Shown: positions 552 through 60,812 of the stretch, piece by piece
Layout: every line of letters starts with the position of its first letter
Position numbering within the stretch: the stretch's first letter is position 1
From: Macrostomum lignano
Lineage: Eukaryota
Assembly: GCA_002269645.1 (NCBI GenBank)
Contig: NIVC01001700.1
Span: 139,923-203,922, forward strand
Length of the DNA stretch: 64,000 nt
Reading direction: 5' to 3'
Made by a program: the position numbers and the translations under genes
The notes under the pieces: generated by a model
The model's database searches: none
What the model saw: only the letters and a program-made list of their open reading frames with translations
Told to the model about the DNA's origin: nothing

Positions 552-13532
<12,981 letters not shown>

Positions 13533-13924: not shown

Positions 13925-14376
13925 CACCGATACTAGAATAACTAGATGGGTCACTCAGTACATTTGCGTGTAAGCTACTTTCAGTTCAGTAGTAAGTTAA
14001 ACTGAAGCATTTTAATGTATTTTTAAAGCCGAGGCTCATTTATTGGCTCTTACCCTCCAGCTTAAACCCTTCAACCGCGCCTTTCCAGACTACCCCCCCT
14101 CGCCCCGGCCCAATTTTTATTGCCTTTCTCGGAATTCCAGTCGAAAGCGGCCATGTACATTTCAGTGGACTGGCTAATGTACATTATAGCTGAACCAATT
14201 AGCAAGCTGTTTACGCCTGCAAGCTTGGGCTTCTAAACTTATCAAAGTCATTTCAGCTGCCTTTATTTTTATAAAATAAGCTTATGCATTCTTCTTTGCT
14301 ACTGAACGGAAAGTAGAAAGCTGTTTTACTAAGTATATATGCCTGAGTGGCCCATCTAGTTATTTTAGAATCTGTG
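13925..14376. mobile_element. P-element-type MITE (non-autonomous, ~450 bp)
   Basis: Imperfect ~34-bp TIRs caccgatactagaataactagatgggtcactcag / ctgagtggcccatctagttattttagaatctgtg, similar to the TIRs of the P element at 37372-38845. No clean TSD seen. Confidence 0.6.
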
Positions 14377-28600: not shown

Positions 28601-31600
28601 AACCCCAGCTAAAAACTCCCTAGCCAATCAGAGCTAACCCCAACCCCAACTAAAAACTCCCCAGCCAATCAGAGCTAACCCCAACCCCAACTAAAAACTC
28701 CCCAGCCAATCAGAGCTAACCCAACCACAACTAAAAACTCCCCAACCAATTAGAGCTAACCCCAACCCCAACTAAAAACTCCCCAGCCAATCAGAGCTAA
28801 CCCCAACCCCAACTAAAAACTCCCCAGCCAATCAGAGCTAACCCAACCACAACTAAAAACTCCCCAACCAATTAGAGCTAACCCCAACCCCAACTAAAAA
28901 CTCCCCAGCCAATCAGAGCTAACCCCAACCCCAACTAAAAACTCCCCAGCCAATCAGAGCTAACCCAACCACAACTAAAAACTCCCCAACCAATTAGAGC
29001 TAACCCCAACCCCAACTAAAAACTCCCCAGCCAATCAGAGCTAACCCAACCACAACTAAAAACTCCCCAACCAATTAGAGCTAACCCCAACCCCAACTAA
29101 AAACTCCCCAGCCAATCAGAGCTAACCCCAACCCCAGCTAAAAACTCCGCCAACCAATCAGACCTGAATCCGGCGGAACACCTTGAACTCCAGCACGGTG
29201 AGCTGGGCGGCCAGCTGCTCCGGCTCCAGCTGGTTGAACACCAGCGAGTTCACGCTCTCGTGATTCACGCGGCCCTTCTTTAGCGAGTCCAGCCGCAGCC
29301 ATTCGTGCTTGACACTGCGGGTGAGATTGGAGTGGAGGGACACTACGCTTGCAACCTGTGTGCGAATTTTACTGTACGCCCTGCCCTGTCCTTGCAGCAA
29401 AATGCATTAGGCTGAGATGTCAAGACTCAGGGGGTATTGCTGAGATCTCAAGACTCATGTAGGGGAACTGCTGAGATCTCAAGACTCACGTGGGGAATTA
29501 CTGAGATCTCAAGGGTCATGTAGGGAATCGCTGAGATGCCAAGGGTCAATTGTGAGTTGTTAGTAGGCCAAGCATCAAAGAGATTGTTAGAGTTAAGTTA
29601 TGGCTTAAGAGATGCTTTGATGCCAAAGCTCAAAGGGAATGCTGATATCTTAGGCTGGATATCTGGCTTTCAGGACCGATGCTTTTTCTGCTTTAAACAT
29701 CTTTTTCCCTCACTAGCATGGTGACTTTACAAGGTCAAAAGCTACGTGTAGCTTAATAAAAAATTGTTTTTTTCACTTTTTATGGCCTCCCCAAAGGGGG
29801 GGGGCGCAGATTGCTAGTCCTATATACTAAAAATGGTTTGTCGGTAGGGATCTTTTTTAGAGCAAAAAAGTTAGCTGAAAAAGCCTGCTATCTCGCCAAT
29901 GCGTTTCGCCGGCGTCTTGCACAAGATTTGCGAATTTAGGGGTCCTTGCACTTATTGACAGCGTTCTTTCTCATCGTGTCACTTCAGCCCGCGGACTCAC
30001 GTGGCCCGCAGGTCAGCCGAGGACACGATGTTGTCGATGTCGCGAGCGTTGACTCGCTCGAAGAAGGCTTCGACAAGCCTGGCCAGGGCTCGGTTGCCTT
30101 CGAATGCGTTGGGATATTTTTGAATCCAGAATCTGCACGATCGGGCGAAGTTGATGAGTAACGGGTGATGCTATTGCACAATCTTTCACTTGAAGACCCG
30201 AAGGTCCCGAAGGTCCCGAAGGTCCCAATAGTCCCGAAGGTCCCAATAGTCCCGAAGGTCCCAATAGTCCCGAAGGTCCCAATAGTCCCGAAGGTCCCAA
30301 TAGTCCCGAAGGTCCCAATAGTCCCGAAGGTCCCAATAGTCCCGAAGGTCCCAATAGTCCCGAAGGTCCCAATAGTCCCGAAGGTCCCAATAGTCCCGAA
30401 GGTCCCAATAGTCCCGAAGCTCCCAATAGTCCCAAAAGTCCCAAGGGCAAGCCGAAACAGTCCAGGACTCGCCTGATCATAAAAAGTCCGCGCCTGGTCA
30501 TCTGGCTGTTCTGTTCGCAAATCTCAATAATGGTGGACGCCATGGCTACAGAGTCGGTGATCCACTCGTGCATAAGGAACAGCACCCGAAGATATTGCTG
30601 ATTTCGCACCTGCAGCTCTTTGTTGCACACCTCTGCAGGTTGCAGATTGGAATTTTGTAAAGATCTATTTTGATACTAAGAATTGCGTTTGACTCGATTT
30701 GCCAAGGATTTTGAATCTGGCCTCACCGAAGCAGCTCATTCCGAATTCCACGAGGCCGCGAAGGGTGCCGCCGCGAACTTTCAGGTCGTCGTTTGGGTGG
30801 TCGCTCAGCAGAAGTTCAGACTCACCGCTGCGGTTGGGTTGCAGTGAAGGTCATTGAGCAGATCTCACTCAGATCTCATTGAGCAGATCTCACTCAGATC
30901 TCATTGAGCAGTTCTCACTCAGCTCTCATTGAGCAGATCTCACTCAGATCTCATTGAGCAGATCTCACTCAGATCTCATTGAGCAGTTCTCACTCAGCTC
31001 TCATTGAGCAGATCTCACTCAGATCTCATTGAGCAGATCTCACTCAGATCTCATTGAGCAGATCTCACTCAGCTCTCATTGAGCAGATCTCACTCAGATC
31101 TCATTGAGCAGATCTCACTCAGATCTCATTGAGCAGATCTCACTCAGCTCTCATTGAGCAGATCTCACTCAGCTCTCATTGAGCAGATCTCACTCAGATC
31201 TCATTGAGCAGTTCTCACTCAGATCTCATTGAGCAGATCTCACTCAGATCTCATTGAGCAGTTCTCACTCAGCTCTCATTGAGCAGATCTCACTCAGATC
31301 TCATTGAGCAGATCTCACTCAGCTCTCATTGAGCAGATCTCACTCAGCTCTCATTGAGCAGATCTCACTCAGATCTCATTGAGCAGATCTCACTCAGCTC
31401 TCATTGAGCAGATCTCACTCAGATCTCATTGAGCAGATCTCACTCAGATCTCATTGAGCAGATCTCACTCAGATCTCATTGAGCAGATCTCACTCAGATC
31501 TCATTGAGCAGATCTCACTCAGCTCTCATTGAGCAGATCTCACTCAGATCTCATTGAGCAGATCTCACTCAGATCTCATTGAGCAGATCTCACTCAGCTC

Positions 31601-34498
31601 TCATTGAGCAGATCTCACTCAGATCTCATTGAGCAGATCTCACTCAGATCTCATTGAGCAGATCTCACTCAGATCTCATTGAGCAGATCTCACTCAGCTC
31701 TCATTGAACAGATCTCACTCAGATCTCATTGAGCAGATCTCACTCAGCTCTCATTGAGCAGATCTCACTCAGCTCTCATTGAGCAGATCTCACTCAGATC
31801 TCATTGAGCAGATCTCACTCAGCTCTCATTGAGCAGATCTCACTCAGATCTCATTGAGCAGATCTCACTCAGCTCTCATTGAGCAGATCTCACTCAGATC
31901 TCATTGAGCAGATCTCACTCAGCTCTCCGACAGCGCTGCACTTTAACTCAAAATTCGCAATATTCAAGTTGAAGTTTTTGCCTAATTTGTTAAAAAGCAC
32001 TCGAACTGGTGAGTTCCATATTATAATTGCTCTCACAGGAGTCTAGGTAGGCTGGTGGAAGGCGAAACCCTCCTCAAAGGGAAGAGGGAGTGAATTCTTT
32101 CCTGGTCGAACTGAGGAAAATTCTCGCGACAAAAGAGTTCGTAATCCGCTTCCCCCCATTCCCTCATCTCTCACTAATCCTTTGCTTTCACGCTATTAAC
32201 TCGAAAGTCGTCAGTGCAATTCAGTTCTGCCTCGGAAATCGCATGCATATTTTATTACGATGGAGCTAATTGCTTTTTGTGTGAGCCGCAGAATGATTAA
32301 TTTCTGCAGCTCGTCAGCAATGCGCCAGAAAAAAACCTGTTTGTGTTTTTGTTGTCGAAAAACTGAACTCAAATCAATTGAGGGACAGAGATTGAGTGAT
32401 GAATGAGGGATTTGGAGTAAGGGCCGTGACAGAGTGATGGTTACAATTATAGGGACAGCGGGATATTCAGAGTGATAGTTGCATTTAGGCTGACAGAGCG
32501 GCATTCTGAGTAACAGAGTGACATTCTGAGTGACAGAGCAGCATTCTGAGTGACAGAGTAACTGTCTGAGTGACAGAGCGGCATTCTGAGTGACAGAGTG
32601 ACATTCTGAGTGACAGAGTGGCATTCTGAGTGGCAGAGTGACATTCTGATTGACAGAGAGGCATTCTGAGTGACAGAGTAACTATCTGAGTGACAGAGTG
32701 GCATTCTGAGTGACAGAGTAACTGTCTGAGTGACAGAGTAACTGTCTGAGTGACAGAGTGACATTCTGAGTGACAGAGTGACATTCTGAGTGACAGAGTG
32801 GCATTCTGAGTGGCAGAGTGACATTCTGAGTGACAGAGAGGCATTCTGAGTGACAGAGTAACTATCTGAGTGACAGAGTGACATTCTGAGTGACAGAGTG
32901 GCATTCTGAGTGACAGAGTTGTATTTTGAGTGAGAGCACAAGATCACTGATTCATTAATACTTCACTGCTAGGAGGAAGGGCTGGACGAGTAGATGCGTG
33001 ACTGGGGAAAATGGATGTGTGACTGGAAGAAGTAGATATTTGACAGGTGGACAGGGGAGCAAGTGCCTGAATATTGCCATTCTGATAAGGCAGCAATAAA
33101 CCCATTAATCTATTTTGATCAGATCAGCTACTTAATGTAGCAAAGTCAAGACTGTTCTTGACTAAAAATAAACAAAAATTCACTGACAGATTATCCACAA
33201 TTAGAATCAATTTCTGGACATCTGCGTTCGAGTTTAATTCGATACAGTTGGTAGCAAGCAAATATTTCCTAGAATTTGCGATTTCTAATCCGCGGTGGCT
33301 TCAGTCCTAATGTCTAAAATGGCTTTTAAACAGCAGAAGCCAGTGCTAATGGATCTTCTGTAATCTTTTTATGATTTTACACGTCTATTCTTGTTGTAGA
33401 GTCTGGTCACAAAGCTCTGAGTCTGGTCATAAAGCTCTGAGTCTGTTCATAAAGCTCTGAGTCTGGTCATAAAGCTCTGAGTCTGGTCATAAAGCTCTGA
33501 GTCTGGTCATAAAGCTCTGAGTCTGGTCATAAAGCTCTGAGTCTGGTCATAAAGCTCTGAGTCTGGTCATAAAGCTCTGAGTCTGGTCATAAAGCTCTGA
33601 GTCTGGTCATAAAGCTCTGAGTCTGGTCATAAAGCTCTGAGTCTAGTCATAAAGCTCTGAGTCTGATCATAAAGCTCCGAGTCTGATCATAAAGCTCTGA
33701 GTCTAGTCATAAAGCTCTGAGTCTGATTCTACTACCAATTCCCAGTCTGATCATACAGCCAGTTCTCAGTCTGATCATACAGCCAGTTTCCAGTCTGATC
33801 ATACAGCCAGTTCCCAGTCTGATCACACAGCCAGTTTCCAGTCTGATCATACAGCCAGTTCCCAGTCTGATCACACAGCCAGTTTCCAGTCTGATCATAC
33901 AGCCAGTTCCCAGTCTGATCATACACCCAGTTCCCAGTCTGATCATACAGCCAGTTTCCAGTCTGATCATATAGCCAGTTCCCAGTCTGATCATACAGCC
34001 AGTTCCCAGTCTGATCATACACCCAGTTCCCAGTCTGATCATACAGCCAGTTTCCAGTCTGATCATACAGCCAGTTTCCAGTCTGATCATACACCCAGTT
34101 CCCAGTCTGATCATACAGCCAGTTTCCAGTCTGATCATATAGCCAGTTCCCAGTCTGATCATATAGCCAGTTTCCAGTCTGATCATACAGCCAGTTTCCA
34201 GTCTGATCATACACCCAGTTCCCAGTCTGATCATACAGCCAGTTTCCAGTCTGATCATACAGCCAGTTCCCAGTATGATCATATAGCCAGTTCCCAGTCT
34301 GATCATATAGCCAGTTCCCAGTCTGATCACACAGCCTCACTCTCACCCGATCTCCTCGGCAAAGCATGCGTCATCCGATGACCGGCAGGGCTTGTTGGCG
34401 TAGGCGTGCCTCTTCTGCAGACTGGGCACCCGGCCGAGCTGCTGGCCAGCCTCTGATCGAACAGATGGAGCAATTTTGCCGTGTCCCGGATGCAGCAT
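16684..34498 (-). CDS. RASGRP: RAS guanyl-releasing protein (RasGRP/CalDAG-GEF family): REM, CDC25 RasGEF, EF-hand pair, C1, coiled coil; ~743 aa
   Basis: Minus-strand exons with consistent phases: 34347-34498 (putative first), 30727-30827, 30473-30632 (GC donor), 30001-30132, 29164-29314, 28172-28345, 27578-27694, 26809-26906, 26189-26375, 25594-25671, ~20561-20644 (donor ambiguous), 20395-20510, 17847-18139, 16957-17174, 16684-16854. Motifs: LVFNQLEPEQLAAQLTVLEF, FNGLSQWVQCMILS, NYNSLMSVIGGL, FKIPILAVHLKDL, SLDCHYTEDDIYEVSLLREP, VFKVYDHDKDDMISESEFEQIAENFPF, and the C1 domain [42 protein letters not shown]. Confidence 0.93.
17400..17800. repeat. 18-bp (2x9) minisatellite
   Basis: Unit ctggtcactcgggtcatt. 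Confidence 0.9.
18220..18880. repeat. 13-bp minisatellite
   Basis: Unit ctctctaatgagt. Confidence 0.95.
19665..20343. repeat. 44-bp minisatellite
   Basis: Unit cacattgagtcactcctcagtaccagtcagagcacctgtctgct. Confidence 0.95.
20715..24840. repeat. 60-bp G-rich minisatellite array, ~69 units, 4.1 kb
   Basis: Unit gtaggggtgaggcgcggggaggatgctgtggggtgcaggtgcttgggtcagccatgtgga with a few recurrent variants; lies inside a RasGRP intron. Confidence 0.97.
25798..25861 (+). mobile_element. Short interspersed hairpin repeat (family copy 4)
   Basis: aaggcacagagtgtacatgcctgacgataagaaagtcagggccgctgtacaccctgtgtgagcg. Confidence 0.7.
26417..26570 (+). mobile_element. tRNA-derived SINE with CORE-like central domain
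   Basis: A-box-like tagcctagtgg, B-box ggttcgattcc, then aagacactttactc...cttcagttcacccagctgtaaaatgggt, resembling the CORE domain (aagtcacttaacctc...cagtttcctcatctgtaaaatggg). Second copy at 45318. Confidence 0.7.
26960..27475. repeat. ~22-bp degenerate AT-rich minisatellite
   Basis: Core tattc(a/c)gatgtctaatcat. Confidence 0.85.
27735..28105. repeat. ~27-bp degenerate minisatellite
   Basis: Core tgttcgataatcatgtatctaatcacc. Confidence 0.85.
28540..29162. repeat. ~41-bp minisatellite
   Basis: Unit ccaatcagagctaaccccaaccccaactaaaaactccccag, abutting the minus-strand donor at 29163. Confidence 0.95.
30195..30443. repeat. 18-bp minisatellite
   Basis: Unit cccgaaggtcccaatagt, inside the GC-AG intron. 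Confidence 0.95.
30850..31925. repeat. 24/25-bp minisatellite
   Basis: Unit ctcattgagcagatctcactcag(at). Confidence 0.95.
32480..32935. repeat. 20-bp minisatellite
   Basis: Unit attctgagtgacagagtggc. Confidence 0.92.
33395..33727. repeat. 20-bp minisatellite
   Basis: Unit agctctgagtctggtcataa. Confidence 0.95.
33735..34332. repeat. 24-bp minisatellite
   Basis: Unit ccagtctgatcatacagccagtt(t/c), adjacent to the donor at 34346. Confidence 0.95.
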
Positions 34499-35815: not shown

Positions 35816-36764
35816 GCCAAGGACAACTTGATAACTCAGGACCGGAAACGAGCCAATTCATGGCGAAAAAAGTATGAGGCTTGTTTAAAAGCATTGTTCT
35901 ATGGCCCATCCGTATGCACATTCTTTCAGTTGCCAATGTATACTCGTATCATATTTGCCTTTTTGATAGGAAGTCAGAAGGCGGGTGCGGGTCGGTTTTC
36001 TTAAATGTTGAATAGTTTTATTACATAAAGTAAACATCGTGAAAATACACAATGGGAAAGCTGTACATGCAGCATGTATAAGGAAACTCGCAAAAAATTT
36101 ACGATTCTTTCTTCATCTGAACTACAAACAGAGAGGAAAATAACAGTCACAGAACGGGACAAGAGCTGACTATGATAAATAGAGCATGTTCTACAAAGAG
36201 CTGACCGTTGACATACTGCTAATCAGGTAAAGCAAAGCAGATTGGAGCATAGTGGCAATGTCGTATCGTCGATTGTTTGGGTGCGTTGTGGCGAACTCAC
36301 CCAAGTTGTCAAGTTGGCAGTTATCAAGTTGTCCTTGGGAGTTGCTTAGAGCATCAAAGGGAGAGTTTGGATTGGGGTTTGGGTTAGGCCATAGACCGAG
36401 GAGGGAATCTGAGATACCACAGGTCAAAGATGGATGCTGTTACGAGCGCATCTTAGGCTACATACTCGTATTAACTGATTCAATGGGCCGTATGCAGAAA
36501 GCTTAGTCCAGACTAGCTAGTCCGGACTGGGTAGTTCTGTCTATGGTCTTAAAATCGGTATGCACAAAAGCTAGTCGCGACTACCGAGATTCGTCTAGGC
36601 TAGACTAGTCTAAGCTAGACAGAGCGCCCAACTTTAGCGCCTAGTTTCAATGATTTTTTTAGTTCTATGGCCCAAACCCCTGTAAATGCTTTCTGTTTAT
36701 ATACTGGGTCGCTAACTTAACCGTTCCTATACTGGTTCTCTGTGCATATGCGTATACTTCTGAA

Positions 36765-37041
36765 ATGTCAGCGACAACAGACTACGAAACAGTTCTTCTT
36801 GACATTCTACAAAGACATTCGGCTTCAATTTTGTCGAAGGGCCAAACGCCTGCATTCAGGCGAAGAAGGGCAAACGCTTGGGAAGACGTAACATCTCAAG
36901 TAAACGACCACTTCAAGACCAATTACACGATCGACCAGGTGCAGAAAAAATGGAAAAACATCTTGCAACGAGTTAAGGAAAAAAACTACGAAGAAGACTG
37001 GAGGCGGGCCAGCTCCAAAAATGTCCTCTAATGACTTCAAG
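36765..37041 (+). pseudogene. Truncated, frameshifted Myb/SANT-like DNA-binding ORF of Harbinger ORF2 type
   Basis: ...RRRRANAWEDVTSQVN...TIDQVQKKWKNI... fits Myb/MADF-like W...W spacing. The typical KTGGGP motif (act gga ggc ggg cca at 36997) is in the +1 frame after an A7 run at 36979-36985; the sequence is cut at 37041 by the inversion. Confidence 0.75.
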
Positions 37042-37371
37042 GTTTGGCCCTTCGACAAAATTGAAGCCGAATGTCTTTGTAGAATGTCAAGAAGAACTGT
37101 TTCGTAGTCTGTTGTCGCTGACATTTCAGAAGTATGTACGCATATGCACAGAGAACCAGTATAGGAACGGTTAAGTTAGCGACCCAGTATATAAACAGAA
37201 AGCATTTACAGGGGTTTGGGCCATAGAACTAAAAAAATCATTGAAACTAGGCGCTAAAGTTGGGCGCTCTGTCTAGCTTAGACTAGTCTAGCCTAGACGA
37301 ATCTCGGTAGTCGCGACTAGCTTTTGTGCATACCGATTTTAAGACCATAGACAGAACTACCCAGTCCGGAC

Positions 37372-38845
37372 CATAGATAATAAAAACACTAGATGGGTCA
37401 CTCGCCTATTTAATGAATAAGCTACTTTTAATTGGGCGTCTGTATAGAGTTTTTTTGATATATTTGTGCATCAAGTAAAATTTTATTATGATGCAGATTG
37501 AAAAGTTATGACATTTCAGGTCCTCATTTTTCTATCACACGGACGGGCAATGAAAACTTTGAGCAAAAATGTGGGCTTCGTGAAAAATTGTTAATAGTGG
37601 CATGCACGTAGCACTTGTGTATTTTTATGCACAGGTCATATCAGCTTTTCATATAAACAAAGATGATTTCAAAAAAATAAGTATTATACATGTATAGCAA
37701 TGGGGAACGACAAAAGCATTTTTAAAAACCAAATAAAGTTTTTTAGTTTAAGCTAGTTAGTTGAACTTAGAAGCAAATGTGCATCGACAAATTGAAGAAG
37801 AATGACAGAACGAAATACTGTCTCGAAATACTGATACTAAATGTTTATTTGTATCAATAAACATTTATTGATACAAATGTTTATTACAAATACAAAGGTT
37901 AATTGGGTTTACTTATCTTTCTGCTTGCTGAACATCGCACTGTCCTATCCTTCAGCGATTTGGCCTCACAGCGGCACCAGTGATGCAGCCTGAGACAAGC
38001 GAACTTGACGCACGGAGCACGAGGGGAAGGTCACATTTGCGTGTCGGAAGCGTCTCAATATTGAATGGCTCACGAGATTCTGCAGCAATTTAGTCTTCGG
38101 TAATGAGCCAAAAAAGATTCCAAAAGACTGAAACTTTCCAGAACTGCTTACGATGGTGCTGTCAATCCAGTGTGAACAACACTGTACTGCTTGTTGGCCA
38201 AGTGAACTCCAGATGGGATTTGAGCGGTCAGAGTTTCCTTGCAATCCAGGCAATCCAGTGCACCACTTTTTGCTACACGTAGCCAGCAACAATGGCTTCG
38301 ATTGATGTGTCAGGAGAAGCAAACTGCATTGAAGCACCTCATCTGTGCGTGTCGTCGGCACGGTTTCGGCAAAAGATGCGCTTGATCCGGCTGGTAAATT
38401 TGGCTCTGTGCAGACGTCTTGCAACTTTTTTCTCATCAGCTTCATGGTAACTTCACAAACGCCCTCTTCCTGAAAGGACAGTCTGATGCGCCGCTTAATT
38501 GACGTCTTCTCTCTGAAGTGGCTTCTCCCTGATTAGTCTTGGCAACACTTGGAAAACAAAATAGCGTACTTGCAAAGGAGAAAAGTTAGACAAATACACT
38601 CCTTGCTTAGCTCTGATTTCTCATAGGAAAGCCATGGTGAACCCCTACTACTACTTTTTGATTCTCCCTCGTAGTAAGCTGAATTTCGTTGCTAGAAACT
38701 TTTGTCTATGGCTCAAACCATAGCGCTGACGTGGAAAAACAAAAATCGATAGTCTTGCGCGCTCATATGCCCAGAAGAGAGTAGGCTATTCAGACATCGA
38801 GCGAATTTGCATTAAGTGACCCATCTAGTGTTTTTAGTATCTGTG
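37372..38845 (-). mobile_element. Non-autonomous P-element derivative (1474 bp) with degenerate transposase C-terminal remnants
   Basis: 30-bp TIRs catagataataaaaacactagatgggtcac / cacagatactaaaaacactagatgggtcac; perfect 8-bp TSD GTCCGGAC (37364-37371, 38846-38853). Frameshifted minus-strand remnants KYAILFSKCCQD, RQLSGASDCP, EAIVAGYV/AKSGALDCLDC, GLTAPS and RLHHWCR...SRKISK resemble P/THAP9 transposase C-termini. Confidence 0.8.
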
Positions 38846-39575
38846 GTCCGGACTAGCTAGTCTGGACTAAGCTTTCTGCATACGGCCCAATATTGCTAAC
38901 GGTAATCCATTTTGGCTTTAAACATAGTAAAATGTGACTGTCTACTTAAGAGTAGCAATGAAAGAATTTAAAGCGAATCTCCTATAGTAGTGTGTGCAGA
39001 AAGTTAATGCGCACTGATAGTTGAATAAATAGAACTTCAAACCTGTGCTGTTTTCAAAAGCTTTTCAAGTGCTGTTCCTCGAGTGCAAATTCTAGGGAGC
39101 AGCAGAAGCTACAGTCTATGGTCTTGGGGGTATATAGAATCTGTGCTTTAGACTAGAGTGCCAATAGCGCGGGAAAGAAGCCTATCTATTCTTTTTTGTA
39201 CGAGCTACAGACAGTATTTCGTCCCCACTGATTATGTACTGAATCAATAATGTCTATTGGTGGTCATCGAGCTCCCGAAATAGGCACAAGAGAAAAATAA
39301 AATCTTAATAAAAGCATTCTATGTGACAATAACTGGAGTTAACATCGATTAGATGCTGGCACTGTCTATGGTTAATATTCTATTTCAAAATACGAGTACA
39401 AAATGTCTTGAATACAATTCTCGTAAATAAAACTAAAAACTTTAATGCTCGGATAGGTGAAATTCGACCATAGACATCTGCGCTGGTGGGCTACTTGGGA
39501 GTTGCAGCTTCGTTTGGACTCATCTAGGCTAACTACAACGTACAACGTTACTTACACTTCATCGTAAGATGCGAG

Positions 39576-40651: not shown

Positions 40652-42189
<1,538 letters not shown>

Positions 42190-42908: not shown

Positions 42909-45900
42909 ATGGGGAATAGAAACACAAAACTTCAAATACTTTCACTTTCCTATGAGGATGCTGAGAGAAGAGGTAAATATCCATGGAAAATACTAAATGT
43001 GGCGAAGCATTTAATTTATTAAATTTAATATTTATGTTATGGCAGCTTTTTCCTTTTTTCCTTATTTGATTATATAACTTCCTTTCATTCTACTTTAATA
43101 CATTAACATTGTTAACATAATATAGTGGTATAGGCCTGATAATTTTTATTTACCATTCAACAATTTAACTTTTTTGAAATGGTAATCTTATGTATTAATA
43201 AGGTATTTCTCTAGCTATCTATCTAGGTTGCCAGTTAGTCAGATTATCATATTCTGTTTTGTAAAACTTTACTCAAAATATACTTAACCTACTATACTAC
43301 TTTAGTATTAGGATTGCAGCTTTACCCTTGGCTTTAGCAATATTTTTAGTCTAATAGATTTAAAAAATTCATAATAAAGTATTTCCTATTGCGTCTTATA
43401 TTTTATTCTGTACCTTATTATACCTAAGATATTCTAAGATAAAGATTGTATTATAGATAAGAATCCAACAAGTACATTCTAAAATCAAGAATAGATTTTC
43501 ATGATGTAATATAAATGTTATTTTGAAAAAAACTATGTTTTGCTAAATTCTATTTTTAATACCCTAAAATATTGTTGGGTCATTATATTAGATCATGTGC
43601 ATAATATTACAATTGAAATAATTCACAAATATCTTGACACATAAACAGTACATTTTATTCTTAAGACCTTATTAGACTGCATATTAATTTAAGATTCAAA
43701 AGCATTTAAATCAATCATTTTTATGGTGAAAAACTTTGCTTAAAGTTTTATCTCATCTATACATGTAGAAGTATATATATTTTTATTTTTAAACTGTATT
43801 AAAAATTCTTGAAAAATGTTAAAATGAACTAGAGCTTCATTTAATGTTATTAAATAGTTAAAAAATCAATTAGCTATTAGCTTTTTGCAGACAAAAACTA
43901 TAACAAAAAACTTATATACCTAACATAATATTAAATATTATATCTTTTTGGAATTAATCATGCTATTAATGATTGCTATTAATCATGCTATTTAAAAAAT
44001 AAATTAGCATATTTTACCTCCAAAAGCATAATTATTTTGAGTAATTATAACTTTCTTTAATGTCATACTATGAAAATAAAACCTAACTAATGCATTTAAT
44101 AACAGAGATCTTTATTGTTGCTTTGTTAAAGCTTCAAAACAAAGTCTAAAAGTTATAGGTAGTAATAGTCAAAGTTGGAAAGGTTTTGAGTAGATTTGTA
44201 ATAGATTTAGCTCATTTATTAAAACAAATGCTTAGCTAAAATAGCTCAAAAACCTTTATTTAGCTATTTGAAATTCAGATAGTCATAAATAGGCATTTTA
44301 TAAATAGATATTTCTTATAAAATAGTATATTTTTAATAGCTATTTTAGTTTGAGTATAATCTGTAATTTATATTTTCAAAGTGTTTATAATTACTTGTAG
44401 AATGACCTTATTGTTTGTATTAAATAAACAATAACTTTTTAGCTTGTAATTGCCAGTTTAAAATCATAAGGCAAAGTAATAAATCCATACTTTTGTCAAA
44501 GTATGGTATGTATGGATTTTTTGTGCATAGGCTCTTTTTGCAAATTTTTCTATAAATAGTATTCTGTTTATATTAGCATATCAGATAGCTTAATAGGTCT
44601 ATTGTTGGTTTTAGAAAACTTAAAGTGAAGATAAAACTATAGCCCTATAAATCATAGAATGTTAGAATACTATATAATACAATATCATTTTTTTACTGGA
44701 GGGACAGTTGACCTCCCTCCCTAGATAGCTCCTCTTTTGCACTTTATTCTCTCCTAATTCCACCTAGCTGCCCCCTCTGTCTCCACCGCTGTGCCACCAT
44801 TTGTCAGCATAAATTAAAGCCTACTTGACTTTTAGTTTCCGAGGCGGAGCTCAAACGCCTGAAGGAGGCCTTCAAAACTATGTCTGTCGGCGACTACATG
44901 AACAAGAAGGTGTTCATGAAGGAGGTGCTAGGCGAGAATGTGCCAAATAAATTGGCTGAGGCAAGTTGTGTTATTAGAATAATATTTACCCAAATGTATT
45001 CGTTCACTTCATCAATTGTTTTCTTCTGGTTTATTGCAGGAGATTTATAGTTTCTTATCTAGTAGCAGTTCGGGACTAACATTCAAAGATCTGCTTGTTG
45101 GCCTTGTGCTGCTAACCAGGGGACGGCTGGCTGAGAAGACGCGCTGTAAGTTATGATATTTATGCGTCATACTATTAGTAGTATGAATAGCAATAAAAAT
45201 ACAACAAGTTTTAAATACACCATATTATACATTACATTGTTGAATTGATTGAAAGCTTAAAACTAGGCCTAATTGGGGTGTTTTGATTATCAGACAGATA
45301 TTATCTTTTAGGGGTTTTTAGTCTAGTGGTTGGAGCGTTGGACTCACTACTTGTAGGTTGGGGGTTCGATTCTCGACCCACCCTGGCACAATTTGTGTCA
45401 TAAGATAATGATGTAACTCTTGCATTGCTTCAGTTCACCCAGCTGTAAAATGGGTGCCAGCATTAGCTGGGGTAATTGAAGGTGTGTGTGGCGACCCCCC
45501 CCATTGCAGTCCTTAGACTGAACAGCCGTACGCAGCCTTCAGTTGCACCGCGCAATAGCTGCGGCTGAGCTGTCGGTTGCTCATCTAACCCAATTGCGGC
45601 AGGTGTAATCAATTATGATTATTATCTTTCAGAATATTTTTTAGATAAAGTTATTTTACGGAAGCCAGCTCTTATTATTGAATTCCAACAATTGCTATCT
45701 ACAGTTCTATTCTGCGTGTACAGCAATGAAAACGGGACACACGTTGAAAAGACTCAGCTAGAGGCGCACATTCAGGATACGGACGGTCGCACGCCACCCG
45801 AACTGCAGGAGCTCTTCAAGAACCGGGACCGGGCCAATCTGGAACAGTTCACCAAGTGGCTGCTTGAGCACCAATCTGTCACCGCCTTCTCCACCTGGCT

Positions 45901-48900
45901 GCTGAAGGAGCCCTGCGTTGTTCGACTGTCCGATGATTCAGAGTCGCTTAGCTTCTATCAGATCCTGGCCGGCGTTACCCACCGTGAGTCTTGGGGCTGT
46001 TTGCACTTTAACCTTGTTTGTACTTTTGTTGTACTTGCACTTTAGTCTGCTTGTACTTTTATCGCCTTAGCAATATAGTATTTTACGAGTATAATATACT
46101 ATTATTGTACTTGAACTTTGGTATGTTTTTATTTTTAGCGCCTTTGCACTTTAGTATATTTGCACTTTTATTGTACTTGCACTCTAGTATCCTTGTACTT
46201 TTGCCGCCTTTGATATTTAGTATTTACATACTGATATTGTATTTGTACCTTGGTATGTTTGTATTTTAGCGCCTTTGCACTTTAGTACGAGTTGTAATTT
46301 TATTGTACTTGCACTTTTGTCTGCTTGTAATTTTATCGCCTTTGCACTTTAAAGTATATTTGTACTTTAAATGCTTTTGGATTTCTGTTATTTTAGTAAT
46401 ATTTTTTTTCATATATGTATTGTTTATTATGTATACTGTGGTCTTCTGCTTTTGTCAAGGTGGCCATTTCAGTAAGATTATTAAACTTTAGTAAACATGT
46501 TTGTATTGTACGTAAAAGCGTGTTTTTATTTTTGTGTCGGTAATATTCCATTTTACTAGCTCTCTGTACCTTATGCATGTTTAAATTTTTTTTAGATTAA
46601 AGTCAGTTGTGACGTGCAACCTCAAACCAGCATATTTTTTATTTGCTTTCAGTTGACGAGAATGACATCATAGAGCTTGAGAAGCGCTACTGGCAGCTCA
46701 AAGGCGTATCGCAGTCCGGTCGATTCGACTTGATCACTTTTCGTCGCCTTGTCTCGCCGCCAATTCCTGACGAAATTGTCGATGGCTTTTTTGCCGCATT
46801 CGACGAGAATAATGACGACCACATCGACTTCAAGGAGATGTCCTGCGGTATTTCCGCCTGCTGCCGGGGGCCCATCACTGAGCGACAAAAATGTATTATG
46901 CTTCTCAGTTGCTAATTTGCTTTGCGACTTCTAGAATTTAGCATGTTGGTTTAGTCAATCTGTGGCTTCCCGACGCCCCGTGTGGACCAGACAACCTAAC
47001 CCAGACACATCATGAGGACCAAGCCAGACACATCATGAGGACCAACCCAGACACATCACGAGGACCAAGCCAGACACATCATGAGGACCAACCCAGACAC
47101 ATCACGAGGACCAAGCCAGACACATCATGAGGACCAACCCAGACACATCATGAGAAACAACTCAGACACATCATGAGGACCAACTCAGACACATCATAAG
47201 GACCAACTCAGACACATCATGAGAAACAACTCAGACACATCATGAGGACCAACTCAGACACATCATGAGGAACAACTCAGACACATCATGAGAAACAACT
47301 CAGACACATCATGAGGACCAACTCAGACACATAATGAGAAACAACTCAGACACATCATGAGGACCAACTCAGACACATAATGAGGACCAACTCAGACACA
47401 TAATGAGGAACAACTCAGACACATCATGAGGACCAACTCAGACACATAATGAGGAACAACTCAGACACATAATGAGGACCAACTCAGACACATCATGAGG
47501 ACCAACTCAGACACATAATGAGGAACAACTCAGACACATCATGAGGACCAACTCAGACACATAATGAGGAACAACTCAGACACATCATGAGGACCAACTC
47601 AGACACATAATGAGGAACAACTCAGACACATCATGAGGAAAAACTCAGACACATCATGAGGAACAACTCAGACATCATGAGGAACAACTCAGACACATCA
47701 TGAGGAACAACTCAGACACATCATGAGGAACAACTCAGACACATCATGAGGAACAACTCAGACACATCATGAGGAACAACTCAGACACATCATGAGGAAC
47801 AACTCAGACACATCATGAGGAACAACTCAGACACATCACGAGGACCAAGCCAGACACATCATGAGGAACAACTCAGACACATCATGATGACCAACTCAGA
47901 CACATCATGAGGAACAACTCAGACACATCATGAGGAAAAACTCAGACACATCATGAGGAACAACTCAGACACATCATGAGGAACAACTCAGACACATCAT
48001 AAGGACCAATGCAGAAACCCCTTTAGGACCAATCCGGATATCCTTTAGGACCAACCTAGACACATGAGAATCAACCCGATCACCTTTTGAGGACCAACCC
48101 GGATACCCCTTGAGCACCAACCCGGATACCCCTTGAGCACCAACCCAGACAATCTCAGTCCAGCTATTCATATCCAGATCGCACCTGCACCCTATCTCCC
48201 CCTGCCCAACTCAGTCTGCTTCAAGGTGTTCGACCGGGACAGAGACGGCTACTTGGACCAGCAGGACGTTCGCCGCATGGTTTGGGCATTCGTATTGGCC
48301 CAGAGTCACACCAGCGTTGACGACTGCTCAACATTGCCCACGACTGCTCCGGTTCAATCGTCGGGAGCCGCCGCCTCCAGTTCGGACGGGAACAGCTGTG
48401 GCGGATTGTCAAACTCGGTAGACAGCGATCTGGTTAATCGGGTGACTGGCGAACTGCTTCAGTTGCACAGCGAGGAGCGCCGGGTCAGCACTGAAGAATA
48501 TCTAATGTGGTCGTTAAGCAACTCTCTGTCCGATGCGCTTATGCGACTGCTGTACCAGGTAGGGCTGGGGTTTAGCATTAGCCTTGTCAAAATTTCAAAA
48601 TTAGGTCAAAACTTTACCTGTCAAATCAGTTAAATCCTTTGAGGTTTCCCGAGATGTCAAGAATTATAAATTACGAGTACTTGATACTCCCAGAACCAAA
48701 GACTACTCAAGTAGAAGGATGGGAGACTATGTTTCTTAGAAAATGTTTATGAGGCTGGTTTTCGCCGAAAAATACACTACAGAGATGGCAAGTTTTCACT
48801 TTTTCTTATTAAAATTGAAAAATGAAAGCTTCCTATCTCCGTAGTGTATTTTTCTAAGAAACAGAGTCTCCCATCCTCCTACTTGAGTAGTCCTTGCCCA

Positions 48901-51900
48901 GAACTTTAAAACAGCTTTATACGAGTACAATGTGTCTTTTTCCGTAATGAATCGTATCTTAATAACATGTAGGGCCCTATTCTCCCCATGCATTTATCCG
49001 TCTCATGTGAATTGCTGATTTCGCACCTGTACAGGTTTGCCATGTAGTTCTGGGCCTGCGGCCACAGTACAGGCAGGACGAGCAGCGCATTGTGTACGAA
49101 TGGGTAAACCGGGAGCGGCGGCGCGGACTCCAGCCTGGCGACAACTGGTACCTGGTGCACCCTACCTGGTGGGCAGCCTGGCAACAGTATGTCAGCTTCG
49201 ATTCGGACGCGCCCCAGCATCATCACTATCCGCTGCAGCTGCAGCAGCCGCAGTCGCAGTCGGCGCCTCCAAAGCGGCACCAGAAAACTTCCTCAATTAG
49301 CAGTGTGGGCGCCGGGTCCATTAGCGGAGTCTCAGCTTCATCATCGGGGTCTGGCGTTGCTGGCGTCAAAGCGCCGCCTCCTAAACCCGGCGCCATCAAC
49401 AACGCGCCTTTACTGGCGCCCTGCCCCGGCCGGCCGCCTTCTCTGACTAACGAAGGCGGCCTGCTGCGTCGCGGACCCGACGGCGGCCCGTTGCGACCTG
49501 GCGAGGACTTCCAAATGCTCCCAGACAAGGTCTGGTGGGCCCTGCAGGCCTGGTACGGCGGCGGCCCGTCTCTGCCCCGCCTAGTAACAGACTCCGGCAG
49601 CCTGGAGCTCTACCCCATCTCCGTAGGCATTCTCAAGCACCAGCAGCCGGCTCCGGCTGGCGCTGCCGGCTCCTCCGCCGTTGCCCGGGCGGCCAGCGTT
49701 GGCCGGTTCATCTCCGGCGTTTTGCCAACCTCGGCCGCTATGGCGGCGGCAGCGGCTGCATCTGCTGTTGTCCCCGGTGGCTCCTCCTCGGCTGCGGCTG
49801 GCTCAGGCGCTGCTGTCGCCGGCGCGCCTCCCGCTGGTGTCAGCGCCGATGCAGCCGCCGCCGCGGCCGCCATCCCGCGCCGGGTGCTGTGCCATTCGGC
49901 CTGTTTCAGCCGGCGCCATACGGTTGGCCAGCTGTACACATTTTTCAGTCAGCGAATGTCAGTTGCTAAGGAGAATTTCCGATTATGGCGCGTGTTTGAT
50001 GACGGACACCAATTGGAGCCGCTGGAAGCTGAGAACGCCTGTCTAGAGGAGCTGGGCCTGCCAGACACTGGCGGCTGCCTGCTGTTCGAGGTGCGCAATC
50101 GGGATCTGACATGGCCGGAGGAGCTGGCCGAGCTAGCGAAGAGCCGGTCCCTGGTCCGCAGGCGCAATTCAATGATGCGAGGCGTCACAGGGCTGAACAA
50201 TTTAGGCAATACCTGCTTTCTGAATTCGGCTCTGCAGTGCGTTAGCAATACGCCTACATTGACGGCCTACTTTCAGGATGGCCTGCACCTGTACGAGCTG
50301 AACCGGTGGGTGGCCAGTTAAACACTGAAACTGTTTTACAATTAATGTTATGCATAAGTTACTAATGTGCTTTTATTTATTTTGCAGCACTAATCCGTTG
50401 GGCATGAAAGGCCACATGGCTGAACGATACGCCGAACTAATCAAAGACATGTGGAACGGCAACGCGTCTGTTGTGGCGCCGCTTAAACTGCGGGTGAGTT
50501 TTGCTTGCGTTTTATGTATCATGTGTTGTTTCAGATGATACATGATCGAAGTGAAATAATACATGATTCATGTGCCACATGATACATGATCGAAGTGACA
50601 GAGAGTACATGATTCATGTGCCACATAATACATGATCGAAGTGACAGAGAGTACATGATTCATGTGCCAGATGATACATGATCGAAGTGACAGAGAGTAC
50701 ATGATTAATGTGCCACATGATACATGATTGAAGTGACATAGAATACATGATTAATGTGCCAGATGATACATGATCGAAGTGACAGAGAATACATGATTCA
50801 TGTGCCACATGTTACATGATTGAAGTGACATAGAATACATGATTAATGTGCCAGATGATACATGATCGAAGTGACAGAGAATACATGATTCATGTGCCAG
50901 ATGATACATGATCGAAGTGACAGAGAATACATGATTCATGTGCCAGATGATACATGATCGAAATGACAGAGAGTACATGATACATGTCTTATGATACATG
51001 ATCAAAGTAACAGAGAATACACGATTCATGTCTCCTACAATACATGGTTCTACTTTCCATCGCACTATACCTACAGATGACGATCGCCAGGTACTCGCGC
51101 AGGTTCTCAGGCAATCAGCAGCACGACTCGCAAGAGTTTCTCAGCTTTCTACTCGACGGCTTACACGAGGATCTGAACCGGGTGAAGGAGAAGCCCTACA
51201 CCGAGCTGAAGGACTCGGACGGCCGCCCGGATGACGAGGTGGCAGCGGAATGCTGGGACAATCACCTGGCCCGCAATCAGAGTATTATTGTCGATTTATT
51301 TCACGGCCAATTGCGCACCGAGGTGCAGTGCAAGGTGTGCTCAAATTCGTCCGTTAAGTTCGATCCCTTCTCGGTGCTGTCCCTGCCGCTGCCGCTGGAG
51401 AACTCACTGCTAATTGAGGTTATCGGTGAGTTAATTAATGAGCTAATGTGAGGTATTAGGGTTTCAGATGATGAGATACTGTTTAAGATGATCATACTAG
51501 GTGAGATACTAGGTTGAGATGATGAGCTACTAGGTGAAATACTAGGTGTCAGATAATAAGATACTAGGTATTACATAATGAGATACTAGGTGCGATACAG
51601 GTGTCAGATGATGAGCTACTAGGTGAGATACAGGTGTCAGGTGATGAGCTACTAGGTGAGATACTAAGTGTCAGGTGATGAGATATTAGATGAGATTCTA
51701 GGTGACAGATGATGAGCTAGTAGGTGAGATACTAGGTGTCAGATGATGGATACTAGGTGAGATACTAGGTGTCAGATGATGGATACTAGGTGAGATACTA
51801 GGTGTCAGATGATGCGATACTAGGTGAGCTACTAGGTAAGATACTAGGGGTCAGATTATGGATACTAGGTGAGATACTAGGTGTCAGATGATGCGATACT

Positions 51901-59509: not shown

Positions 59510-60812
59510 AAGCCAAGAGACTGAGGGCGCCCATCAAGAGACAGGGGCGCTAATCAAGAGACAGGGGTACTCACCAAGAAATACGGGCACCCACCAAGAG
59601 AAAGGGGCACCCACCAAAAGAAAGGGGCACCCACCAAGAGAAAGGGGCACCCACCAAGAGAAAGGGGACCCACCAATAAACAGGGGCACCCACCAAGAGA
59701 CAGTTAGCGGCCCACCAAGAGACAGGGGCACCCAACAAGAGACAGTGAGCGGCCCACCAAGAGACAGGGGCACCCACCAAGAGACAGTTAGCGGCCCACC
59801 AAGAGACAGGGGCACCCTAACTGAGACAGTTAGCGGCCCACCAAGAGACAGGGGCACCCACCAAGAGACAGTTAGCGGCCCACCAAGAGACAGGGGCACC
59901 CACTAAGAGACAGTTAGCGGCCCACCAAGAGACAGGGGCACCCACCAAGAGACAGTTAGCGGCCCACCAAGAGACAGGGGCACCCAACAAGAGACAGTTA
60001 GCGGCCCACCAAGAGACGGGCACCCTAACTGAGACAGTTAGCGGCCCACCAAGAGACAGGGGCACCCACCAAGAGACAGTTAGCGGCCCACCAAGAGACA
60101 GGGGCACCCACCAAGAGACAGTTAGCGGCCCACCAAGAGACAGGGGCACCCACCAAGAGACAGTTAGCGGCCCACCAAGAGACAGGGGCACCCAACAAGA
60201 GACAGTTAGCGGCCCACCAAGAGACAGGGGCACCCTAACTGAGACAGTTAGCGGCCCACCAAGAGACAGGGGCACCCACCAAGAGACAGTTAGCGGCCCA
60301 CCAAGAGACAGGGGCACCCTAACTGAGACAGTTAGCGGCCCACCAAGAGACAGGGGCACCCACCAAGAGACAGTTAGCGGCCCACCAAGAGACAGGGGCA
60401 CCCACTAAGAGACAGTTAGCGGCCCACCAAGAGACAGGGGCACCCACCAAGAGACAGTTAGCGGCCCACCAAGAGACAGGGGCACCCAACAAGAGACAGT
60501 TAGCGGCCCACCAAGAGACGGGCACCCTAACTGAGACAGTTAGCGGCCCACCAAGAGACAGGGGCACCCACCAAGAGACAGTTAGCGGCCCACCAAGAGA
60601 CAGGGGCACCCACCAAGAGACAGTTAGCGGCCCACCAAGAGACAGGGGCACCCACCAAGAGACAGTTAGCGGCCCACCAAGAGACAGGGGCACCCAACAA
60701 GAGACAGTTAGCGGCCCACCAAGAGACAGGGGCACCCTAACTGAGACAGTTAGCGGCCCACCAAGAGACAGGGGCACCCACCAAGAGACAGTTAGCGGCC
60801 CACTAAGAGACA
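59510..60812. repeat. 42-bp minisatellite
   Basis: Unit ccaccaagagacagttagcggcccaccaagagacaggggcac, built from two related halves. Confidence 0.95.

What the first reader, a model, noticed from the sequence alone, without database searches (positions are those of the whole stretch)
36485..38888. Harbinger-derived foldback element with two identical ends facing a Myb gene fragment: a possible hairpin-RNA silencer
Seen in sequence: with the nested P element removed, the element is ~920 bp. It consists of a 363-bp arm (36485-36847), a 194-bp spacer and the inverted same arm (37042-37371 plus 38854-38888), flanked by AAT on both sides. Each arm holds the element terminus, the upstream region and the first 28 codons of a Myb/SANT-like ORF, so identical MSATTDYETVLLDILQRHSASILSKGQT ORFs start on both strands and converge on the spacer. 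Established: Harbinger elements carry a Myb-like ORF, have short GG(G)CC-type termini and make 3-bp TSDs; the maize Mu killer locus is an inverted duplication of a transposon end whose hairpin transcript silences the family. Inference: the intact TSD suggests it moved as a unit using two copies of one end, and any transcript through it would fold into ~330 bp of near-perfect dsRNA able to silence the autonomous family in trans.
Basis: partly seen in the sequence, partly recalled or inferred. Interest (0 to 1): 0.8.

Follow-up and report, generated by a model that had tools for sequence, protein, structure and literature searches.

The report
Defective Harbinger transposon folded back on itself
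This is a real but broken copy of a Harbinger-type jumping gene in which one end has been duplicated in mirror image, so any RNA made from it would fold into a long double strand; that could feed RNA silencing, but it is a known kind of transposon debris and the silencing role is untested.

Summary
Window 36485-36847 (363 nt) and 37042-37371 plus 38854-38888 (365 nt) are reverse complements. They have no substitutions and one 2-nt indel. A 194-nt spacer separates them and AAT flanks both sides. The right arm carries a non-coding P-like element with 31-nt TIRs and an 8-bp duplication, GTCCGGAC.

Harbinger ancestry is now supported by evidence. The ORF is a Myb_DNA-bind_5 domain (E = 1e-9). Its closest relatives (33-44% identity) lie in public contigs that also carry a DDE_Tnp_4 transposase. 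Three of those contigs share the terminal motif GGNNNGTATGCA and the same subterminal layout. Where both ends can be compared, the ends share only 23 nt (L001) or about 110 imperfect nt (L006). So a 363-nt arm containing 28 codons is a derived rearrangement, not a natural long TIR. The indel and the one-sided insertion argue against an assembly palindrome.

Two inferences are weaker. This clade inserts at A/T-only trinucleotides, so the matching AAT does not show that the element moved as a unit. The silencer role could not be tested here. A transcript would form a stem of about 324 bp, but neither RNA data nor the source genome were available.

Verdict: a new member of a known kind, of modest interest.

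The parts
36482..36484 (.). Left 3-bp flanking repeat AAT (putative target-site duplication)
   Evidence: identical to 38889-38891
36485..36847 (+). Left arm (363 nt): Harbinger 5' (Myb-side) terminus, subterminal repeats, putative promoter, 5' UTR and codons 1-28 of the Myb-like gene
36485..36496 (+). Terminal motif GGGCCGTATGCA (clade pattern GGNNNGTATGCA); mirror copy at 38877-38888
   Evidence: the same motif ends the elements in L001 (both ends), L006 and L007
36504..36528 (.). Near-palindrome TAGTCCAGACTAGCTAGTCCGGACT within a CTAG-rich subterminal region (8 CTAG in 36513-36641 against 2.4 per kb in the window). Inferred binding sites for the Myb-like protein
   Evidence: binding role inferred from Harbinger3_DR, as described in PMC9710019
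36555..36576 (+). Second, internal copy of the terminal motif (CGGTATGCACAAAAGCTAGTCG), about 72 nt from the end; the relatives have one at about 90-95 nt
   Evidence: (family D3)
36698..36703 (+). TATA-like box TATATA, 62 nt upstream of the ATG; a mirror copy lies in the right arm, so the two putative promoters converge
   Evidence: read from the sequence; promoter function is inferred, not tested
36765..37031 (+). 88-aa ORF holding a complete Myb_DNA-bind_5 domain. Its tail is out of frame after the A7 run at 36979-36985
36848..37041 (+). Spacer or loop (194 nt): single-copy continuation of the Myb gene (codons 29 to about 93), cut at the junction 37041/37042 with no microhomology
37042..37371 (-). 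Right arm, inner 330 nt (inverted copy of element positions 36-363, with 2 extra nt at about 37135-37136)
37364..37371 (.). GTCCGGAC, left copy of the 8-bp duplication made by the nested element
   Evidence: target motif in PMC2577343
37372..38845 (.). Nested non-autonomous P-like element, 1474 bp, with 31-nt TIRs (37372-37402 / 38815-38845, 29/31). No recognisable protein domain
38846..38853 (.). GTCCGGAC, right copy of the 8-bp duplication
38854..38888 (-). Right arm, outer 35 nt, including the terminus
38889..38891 (.). Right 3-bp flanking repeat AAT

Best explanation
This is a defective, non-autonomous derivative of a PIF/Harbinger DNA transposon. It belongs to a clade whose ends read GGNNNGTATGCA. 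The first 557 bp of the element carry the terminus, CTAG-rich subterminal repeats, the promoter region and about 93 codons of the Myb-like gene. They are joined head-to-head to a second, inverted copy of the first 363-365 bp. The transposase gene and the natural 3' end are gone. The most likely origin (inferred) is aberrant double-strand-break repair during or after transposition. In that scheme, synthesis from both broken ends copied the same Myb-side end, which is possible because the two natural TIRs are near-identical, and the two products were joined without microhomology. A P-like MITE later inserted 35 bp from the right terminus. This moved the terminal repeat 1.5 kb away from its subterminal sites and probably immobilised the element. 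The locus most likely has no evolved function. Its one predictable activity is to make dsRNA. A read-through transcript of either strand folds into a stem of about 324 bp with a 194-nt loop. If the two mirror-image Myb promoters fire, the convergent transcripts also pair with each other across the Myb 5' UTR and codons 1-93. In an RNAi-competent host that dsRNA would be diced into small RNAs matching the 5' part of the family's Myb mRNA and its ends. Shown here: the structure, the family assignment, its derived nature and the folding potential. Inferred: the repair origin, promoter activity, small-RNA output and any silencing effect.
For: Structure. Myb domain. Family: phmmer against 1.84 billion representatives found only distant relatives, best 44%. 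The closest ones sit in contigs with a convergent DDE_Tnp_4/Plant_tran transposase gene (L001, L006, L007, L008). L001, L006 and L007 end in GGCTGGTATGCA, against GGGCCGTATGCA here, and have a second internal copy of that motif and CTAG-rich repeats. Derived nature: the two ends of L001 share only 23 nt; those of L006 share about 110 nt at about 80% with gaps; neither reaches the ORF start. Truncation: the family frame TGGGP..K.S.ND continues in frame +1 up to the junction, and relatives are 140-440 aa. Not an assembly artefact: the arms differ by a 2-nt indel, only one arm carries the P-like insertion with its own 8-bp duplication, and the flanks are unique and differ on the two sides. Folding: -759 kcal/mol, z = -81, for the element without the insertion; 324 arm-to-arm pairs in the present state. 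There is no AATAAA or ATTAAA on either strand inside the foldback. Symmetry: in L001 the terminal motif and its internal copy lie at the same distances from both ends, so two 5' ends mimic the natural arrangement.
Against: There is no transcript or small-RNA evidence. No transposase remnant or second copy lies in the window, and the source genome could not be found, so I cannot show that an autonomous parent exists to be silenced. The flanking AAT is not the canonical TWA Harbinger target. The promoter is inferred from a TATA-like box only. The locus lies in intergenic DNA rich in minisatellites and transposon fragments, about 7 kb upstream of the nearest recognisable gene (a USP32-like gene starting near 45839), so host read-through transcription is not assured.
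Confidence: 0.72

Rival explanations
1. Effective trans-silencer. The locus acts like maize Mu killer: its hairpin RNA yields small RNAs that heritably silence the autonomous Harbinger family in this genome.
For: It has the same anatomy as Mu killer, which is a partial inverted duplication of a transposon end plus the start of its gene (PMC3440606). A perfect stem of about 324 bp is predicted. Inverted Ac/Ds duplications also start siRNA silencing (bioRxiv 10.1101/2020.01.07.897926), and animal hpRNA loci silence selfish genes (PMC10317233 and PMC10292708). Mirror-image TATA-like boxes could drive transcription without help from a flanking gene.
Against: Nothing here shows transcription, small RNAs or a target. 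Mu killer depends on read-through from a flanking gene, and no gene is seen next to this locus. Most inverted transposon fragments are inert. The stem covers only the 5' UTR and 28 codons.
Confidence: 0.2
2. Mobile foldback family. The two-5'-end unit is itself a transposable non-autonomous element, MITE-like at 922 bp, that inserted here as a unit and exists in many copies.
For: It has exact termini at both ends and AAT on both sides. Two identical ends reproduce the symmetrical arrangement of terminal and subterminal motifs seen in L001. The arms show no substitutions, which suggests youth.
Against: The window has only one copy. There were no exact matches to the terminus in JGI metagenome contigs and none to the junction-specific ORF in the gene-position index. 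The flanking match is weak evidence because the clade's flanks are all A/T-only trinucleotides. In-situ rearrangement of a resident copy would keep its duplication.
Confidence: 0.35
3. Natural long TIRs. The parent element normally has terminal inverted repeats of about 360 bp that include the ORF start, and this copy is a simple internal deletion.
For: Some DNA transposon families do have long TIRs, and PIF/Harbinger TIR length is variable (bioRxiv 10.64898/2026.05.26.728016). L006 shows about 110 nt of imperfect subterminal inverted similarity.
Against: In L001, L006 and L008 the two ends lead into different genes, Myb and transposase. Where both ends can be compared (L001, L006), the similarity between them stops well before either ORF. 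Sharing 28 codons between two unrelated genes is implausible.
Confidence: 0.03
4. Assembly or sequencing artefact: a palindromic chimera.
For: Palindromic chimeras are a known artefact of long reads and of amplification (general knowledge).
Against: There is a 194-nt asymmetric spacer and a 2-nt indel between the arms. A 1474-bp insertion with its own TIRs and 8-bp duplication sits in one arm only. The inversion ends exactly at the transposon termini, and the unique flanks differ on the two sides.
Confidence: 0.03
5. Two independent head-to-head insertions of the same family, followed by deletion of everything between them.
For: If the family prefers A/T trinucleotides, matching outer flanks can arise by chance.
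Against: It needs three events within 1 kb. The arms have no substitutions. The inner junction lies inside both copies, with no trace of intervening host DNA.
Confidence: 0.05
6. Protein-level repressor. The left arm plus the spacer expresses an 88-aa peptide holding only the Myb domain. It occupies the subterminal binding sites and blocks transposition, like the KP repressor of P elements.
For: The ORF keeps the whole Myb_DNA-bind_5 domain (profile positions 10-75 of 78) behind its own TATA-like box. It lacks the C-terminal coiled-coil part seen in relatives.
Against: Convergent transcription and hairpin formation would tend to destroy this mRNA. The tail is frameshifted. There is no evidence of expression or of selection. 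The KP analogy comes from memory.
Confidence: 0.05

Closest known systems
Autonomous PIF/Harbinger elements with convergent Myb_DNA-bind_5 and DDE_Tnp_4 genes (public contigs L001 from Logan SRR26493807, L006 from Logan ERR14788473, L007 from ENA ERZ23491819)
   Same: The terminal motif is GGNNNGTATGCA. A second internal copy of that motif lies 70-95 nt in. The subterminal repeats are CTAG-rich. The Myb gene starts 280-350 nt from the end and reads inward. The flanks are A/T-only 3-nt sequences.
   Different: The window copy has no transposase gene and no natural 3' end. Its right end is an inverted second copy of the left end. Myb identity is only 33-44%, so these contigs are cousins, not the parent. 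The flanks are not the canonical TWA.
Maize Mu killer (Muk), a natural inverted duplication of the TIRA end of MuDR and part of mudrA
   Same: It is an inverted duplication of one transposon end plus the 5' part of the adjacent gene, and a long hairpin RNA is predicted (PMC3440606).
   Different: Muk belongs to the Mutator superfamily and is from a plant. Its hairpin is about 4 kb and is driven by read-through from a flanking gene. Silencing by siRNA is shown genetically. Here the element is a Harbinger in a probable animal, the stem is about 0.33 kb, no flanking gene is seen, and nothing has been tested.
Inverted Ac/Ds duplications made by alternative transposition that trigger siRNA silencing in maize
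   Same: A transposition or repair accident creates an inverted transposon duplication that can yield dsRNA (bioRxiv 10.1101/2020.01.07.897926).
   Different: Those are hAT elements. The rearrangements are larger and include host DNA. Silencing was demonstrated.
Animal hairpin-RNA (hpRNA) endo-siRNA loci, for example in Drosophila simulans
   Same: Long inverted repeats derived from selfish genes are transcribed into hairpins that Dicer processes (PMC10317233 and PMC10292708).
   Different: Those loci are expressed, are known RNAi substrates and target meiotic drivers. Here expression is unknown and the target would be a transposon's Myb gene.
MITEs and other internally deleted non-autonomous DNA transposons formed by abortive gap repair
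   Same: It is non-coding or truncated, keeps the termini needed for mobilisation, and a repair-accident origin is proposed (bioRxiv 10.64898/2026.05.26.728016).
   Different: Ordinary deletion derivatives keep both natural ends. This one has the same end twice, and no evidence of amplification is available.
Drosophila P element (comparison for the nested insertion only)
   Same: It has 31-nt TIRs beginning CAT and an 8-bp duplication. That duplication, GTCCGGAC, equals the core of the P target motif ATRGTCCGGACWAT (PMC2577343).
   Different: It has no THAP or transposase coding capacity. The host is not a close relative of any sequenced insect in the databases. Its superfamily rests on the end features only.

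Membership tests
PIF/Harbinger superfamily | 3-bp target-site duplication | tested here: met
   AAT on both sides. This is weak on its own: 1/64 by chance, and much more likely if the clade prefers A/T trinucleotides.
PIF/Harbinger superfamily | Characteristic TWA (TAA/TTA) target | tested here: not met
   The flanks are AAT/AAT here, AAT in L001, ATT in L006 and TAT in L007. All are A/T-only, but none is TWA in the register that gives a duplication here.
PIF/Harbinger superfamily | Short TIRs shared with elements that encode a DDE_Tnp_4 (PIF-type) transposase | tested here: met
   GGGCCGTATGCA here against GGCTGGTATGCA at the ends of L001, L006 and L007, which carry DDE_Tnp_4/Plant_tran genes.
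PIF/Harbinger superfamily | Myb/SANT/MADF-like second gene | tested here: met
   Myb_DNA-bind_5 at E = 1.1e-9, above the gathering score. It is truncated at about codon 93 and frameshifted.
PIF/Harbinger superfamily | DDE transposase gene (autonomous members) | tested here: not met
   tblastn of the L001 transposase against the window gave nothing below E = 1. This copy is therefore non-autonomous, which is compatible with being a derivative.
Mu killer-type hairpin silencer | Inverted duplication of a transposon end including part of its gene | tested here: met
Mu killer-type hairpin silencer | Transcribed into a hairpin RNA | not testable with these tools
   Only folding potential is shown. 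No RNA data were available.
Mu killer-type hairpin silencer | Produces small RNAs and silences active family members in trans | not testable with these tools
   There are no small-RNA data, and the source genome and its autonomous copies were not found.
MITE / mobile foldback family | Multiple dispersed copies with the same internal junction, each with its own duplication | not testable with these tools
   The window has a single copy. There were no hits in the public collections searched.
P superfamily (nested element) | 7-8-bp duplication and TIRs of P type | tested here: met
   8-bp GTCCGGAC on both sides and 31-nt TIRs at 29/31. It matches the P target motif core.
P superfamily (nested element) | THAP-domain transposase | tested here: not met
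   No Pfam hit for any stop-free segment of 45 aa or more. The copy is non-autonomous, and hAT, which also makes an 8-bp duplication, is not formally excluded.

The most novel reading that the evidence does not exclude
A naturally arisen, self-driven silencer of a Harbinger family in an animal genome. The two mirror-image Myb promoters fire towards each other. Without any host promoter, they make both a hairpin and intermolecular dsRNA covering the Myb 5' UTR and codons 1-93. The resulting siRNAs or piRNAs shut down the protein that recruits the transposase. This would be an animal, PIF/Harbinger counterpart of Mu killer that carries its own trigger.
Probability: 0.12. Interest if true: 0.6.

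Novelty: new member of a known kind. Interest (0 to 1): 0.3.

Why it matters
How a genome first recognises an active DNA transposon is still known from only a few natural cases, such as Mu killer and the Ac/Ds inverted duplications, all from plants. A clean, young inverted duplication of a Harbinger 5' end that includes its own promoter would be a convenient test case in an animal. It would matter only if the family is active in the source genome and the locus is expressed. Without those data it is simply a well-resolved example of a common by-product of transposon repair. It is useful for annotation, because two converging 'Myb' ORFs here should not be called genes. It also defines a Harbinger clade with GGNNNGTATGCA ends and non-TWA flanks.

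Tried and rejected
1. Exact-product look-ups of the 88-aa ORF and of the junction-specific 99-aa ORF found nothing on record.
2. A word-indexed homology search with the Myb ORF gave no hit. The full HMMER scan was needed.
3. An exact 22-nt terminus search in JGI metagenome contigs gave 0 hits.
4. Identifying the organism failed. The USP32-like exon has a best named hit of only 32% (Periplaneta), and Rfam found nothing in the window.
5. A search for a transposase remnant or a second Harbinger copy in the window found none.
6. A coding domain in the nested element was looked for and not found.
7. Fold-back priming was rejected as a simple origin. There is no microhomology at 37041/37042 (read), and self-primed synthesis on the chromosome would have run past the terminus into flanking DNA.
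8. I first read the relatives' flanks as an AWT preference. L007 (TAT) weakened that to 'A/T-only trinucleotides'.
9. The Pfam hits SCNM1_acidic/OCRE (ORF 33732-34364) and Collagen (ORF 30013-30627) fall inside minisatellites and were treated as low-complexity artefacts.
10. L008 is a distant relative (30% identity) with the same gene layout but no detectable TIRs, so it was not used for end comparisons.
Full report
**Observation**

The structure is exactly as described. The repeat finder reports three perfect inverted pairs: 36520-36754/37137-37371, 36754-36847/37042-37135 and 36484-36527/38846-38889. I aligned 36485-36847 globally against the reverse complement of 37042-37371+38854-38888. 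The result is 363 vs 365 nt, no substitutions and a single 2-nt indel 10 nt upstream of the ATG.

The spacer is 194 nt, and the element without the insertion is 922 bp. The flanks read TTCAAT|GGGCC...GGCCC|AATATT. Two ORFs starting MSATTDYETVLLDILQRHSASILSKGQT converge from the two arms.

One correction concerns the nested element. The element proper is 37372-38845 (1474 bp), with 31-nt TIRs matching at 29/31. GTCCGGAC is duplicated at 37364-37371 and 38846-38853. The window holds no other copy of the arm.

**What the element is**

The + strand ORF is a Myb_DNA-bind_5 domain (E = 1.1e-9, above Pfam's cut-off). A word-indexed search found no relatives. A full HMMER scan of 1.84 billion representative proteins found only 30, the best at 44% identity.

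The closest relatives could be placed on contigs. L001 (3494 bp) carries the Myb gene reading inward from one end and a DDE_Tnp_4/Plant_tran transposase gene reading inward from the other. L006, L007 and the more distant L008 have the same convergent two-gene layout. This is the defining PIF/Harbinger organisation (PMC9710019; bioRxiv 10.64898/2026.05.26.728016).

The ends match as well:
- The window element starts GGGCCGTATGCAGAAAG.
- L001 starts GGCTGGTATGCATAAAAAG at both ends.
- L006 starts GGCTGGTATGCACCGAAAG.
- L007 starts GGCTGGTATGCAAGAAAAG.

All of them carry a second internal copy of the GTATGCA motif 70-95 nt in, within CTAG-rich repeats. The window arm has 8 CTAG between 36513 and 36641, against 2.4 per kb in the window as a whole. 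By analogy with Harbinger3_DR, whose Myb-like protein binds a subterminal 9-bp motif (as described in PMC9710019), these repeats are probably protein-binding sites. That is an inference.

**Derived foldback or natural long TIR?**

It can be answered only through relatives, because the parent was not found. In L001 the two ends share just the 23-nt TIR (22/23). In L006 they share about 110 nt at about 80% identity with gaps. In both, the similarity stops far from the ORF starts at about 330-350 nt, and the two ends lead into different genes. A perfect 363-nt repeat containing a promoter region and 28 codons is therefore a rearrangement.

The Myb gene is truncated, not complete. After the A7 run at 36979-36985 the conserved family continuation (TGGGPAPKMSSNDFK) lies in frame +1 and runs to the junction at 37041. 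In an alignment with ten relatives the G and D of that stretch are invariant, and the relatives go on for 140-440 aa. So the window copy has a frameshift, and the stop codon of the 88-aa ORF is not native.

**Is it an artefact?**

This is very unlikely. The arms differ by an indel. The spacer is asymmetric. One arm alone carries a 1.47-kb insertion with its own TIRs and duplication. The inversion ends exactly at the transposon termini, and the unique flanks differ on the two sides.

**The nested element**

It has no recognisable coding domain. Its 31-nt TIRs and 8-bp duplication fit the P superfamily. The duplicated GTCCGGAC is exactly the core of the 14-bp palindromic target of the Drosophila P element, ATRGTCCGGACWAT (PMC2577343).

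The element inserted after the foldback formed, because the left arm has the intact site at 36520-36527. It separates the right terminus from its subterminal repeats by 1.5 kb, which probably ended any mobility. That last point is an inference.

**Did it move as a unit?**

The matching AAT is weaker evidence than it looks. The flanks next to the GG terminus are AAT/AAT here, AAT (and ..T) in L001, ATT in L006 and TAT in L007. All are A/T-only, and none is the canonical TWA. If the clade prefers such sites, a match on both sides is cheap.

There is also an in-situ route that keeps the original duplication. After excision, gap repair from a sister copy could have used the Myb-side end as template for both broken ends, which the near-identical TIRs make possible. 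The two products would then have been joined. The junction at 37041/37042 shows no microhomology, which fits end-joining better than fold-back priming.

**How it would work**

Without the insertion, the element folds as RNA into a single perfect hairpin (-759 kcal/mol, z = -81). In its present state, a transcript of 36385-38988 still forms 324 arm-to-arm pairs (36524-36847 with 37042-37367), plus a 39-bp terminal stem across the insertion.

Each arm has a TATA-like box 62 nt upstream of its ATG (36698-36703 and its mirror copy). There is no AATAAA or ATTAAA on either strand within the foldback. If the Myb promoters are active, the locus would make convergent transcripts without help from a host promoter. 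These would give a hairpin stem of roughly 120 bp per transcript and an intermolecular duplex across the 5' UTR and codons 1-93. All of this is inference.

The locus lies in intergenic DNA full of minisatellites, with a non-LTR retrotransposon fragment at 40741-42183. It is about 7 kb upstream of the first recognisable exon of a USP32-like gene. Host read-through transcription is therefore not assured.

**Comparison with known systems**

The anatomy parallels maize Mu killer (PMC3440606) and the Ac/Ds inverted duplications that start siRNA silencing (bioRxiv 10.1101/2020.01.07.897926). Any output would resemble that of animal hpRNA loci (PMC10317233 and PMC10292708). Membership of that functional class needs transcription, small RNAs and a trans effect, and none of these could be tested here. 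Membership of PIF/Harbinger as a non-autonomous derivative is well supported, except for the non-TWA flank.

**Verdict**

This is a real, cleanly resolved, rearranged Harbinger derivative with a later P-like insertion, and a new member of a known kind. I put the probability that it is an effective silencer at about 0.2. The more specific 'self-driven animal Mu killer' reading gets about 0.12. Interest is 0.3.

Noticed in passing
window 13925-14376: A second, roughly 450-bp P-like MITE. Its ends (CACCGATACTAGAATAACTAGATGGGTCACTCAG / CACAGATTCTAAAATAACTAGATGGGCCACTCAG) resemble the TIRs of the nested element, but its 8-nt flanks (ACATGTAA vs CCAAATTA) do not match. It is probably an older or rearranged copy.
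   Followed up: partly
window 35896-35931: A 36-nt stretch, GTTCTATGGCCCATCCGTATGCACATTCTTTCAGTT, is 75% identical to an internal part of the Harbinger arm (36662-36697) and contains a CGTATGCA motif like the terminus. It may be a relic of an older related element about 590 bp upstream.
   Followed up: no
whole window, e.g. 20721-24844 (60-bp unit x 69), 5724-7868, 30851-31927, 46998-48009, 59513-60812: The density of minisatellites is extraordinary: 102 TRF rows, most with units of 10-60 bp in long arrays, covering a large share of the 64 kb. Many long 'ORFs' on both strands, and some Pfam hits (Collagen, SCNM1_acidic/OCRE), are artefacts of these repeats.
   Followed up: partly
window 45839-52748 (+): A USP32-like gene with EF-hand, DUSP and UCH parts lies in several exons (45839-45988, 46628-46891, 48211-48561, 49032-50303, 50335-50505, 51071-51424, 52590-52748). 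The best named hit is only 32% identical (Periplaneta americana), so the source organism has no close relative in the protein database.
   Followed up: partly
window 40741-42183 (-): A 480-aa ORF with an RNase H domain and weak RVT_3 and zf-RVT hits. It is probably the 3' part of a non-LTR retrotransposon, 1.9 kb downstream of the foldback.
   Followed up: no
L001 1-23 and 3431-3453; L006 6-24; L007 147-165: The public Harbinger contigs most similar to the window element form a clade with ends GGCTGGTATGCA. Their A/T-only 3-nt flanks (AAT, ATT, TAT) are not the textbook TWA. This may be a clade-specific target preference worth checking on more copies.
   Followed up: partly
window 36478-36484 + 38892-38895 (inferred empty site CAATATTG): The reconstructed pre-insertion site ..TTCAATATTGC.. 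contains the 8-nt palindrome CAATATTG, offset from the 3-bp duplication. This could be chance or part of a palindromic target.
   Followed up: no
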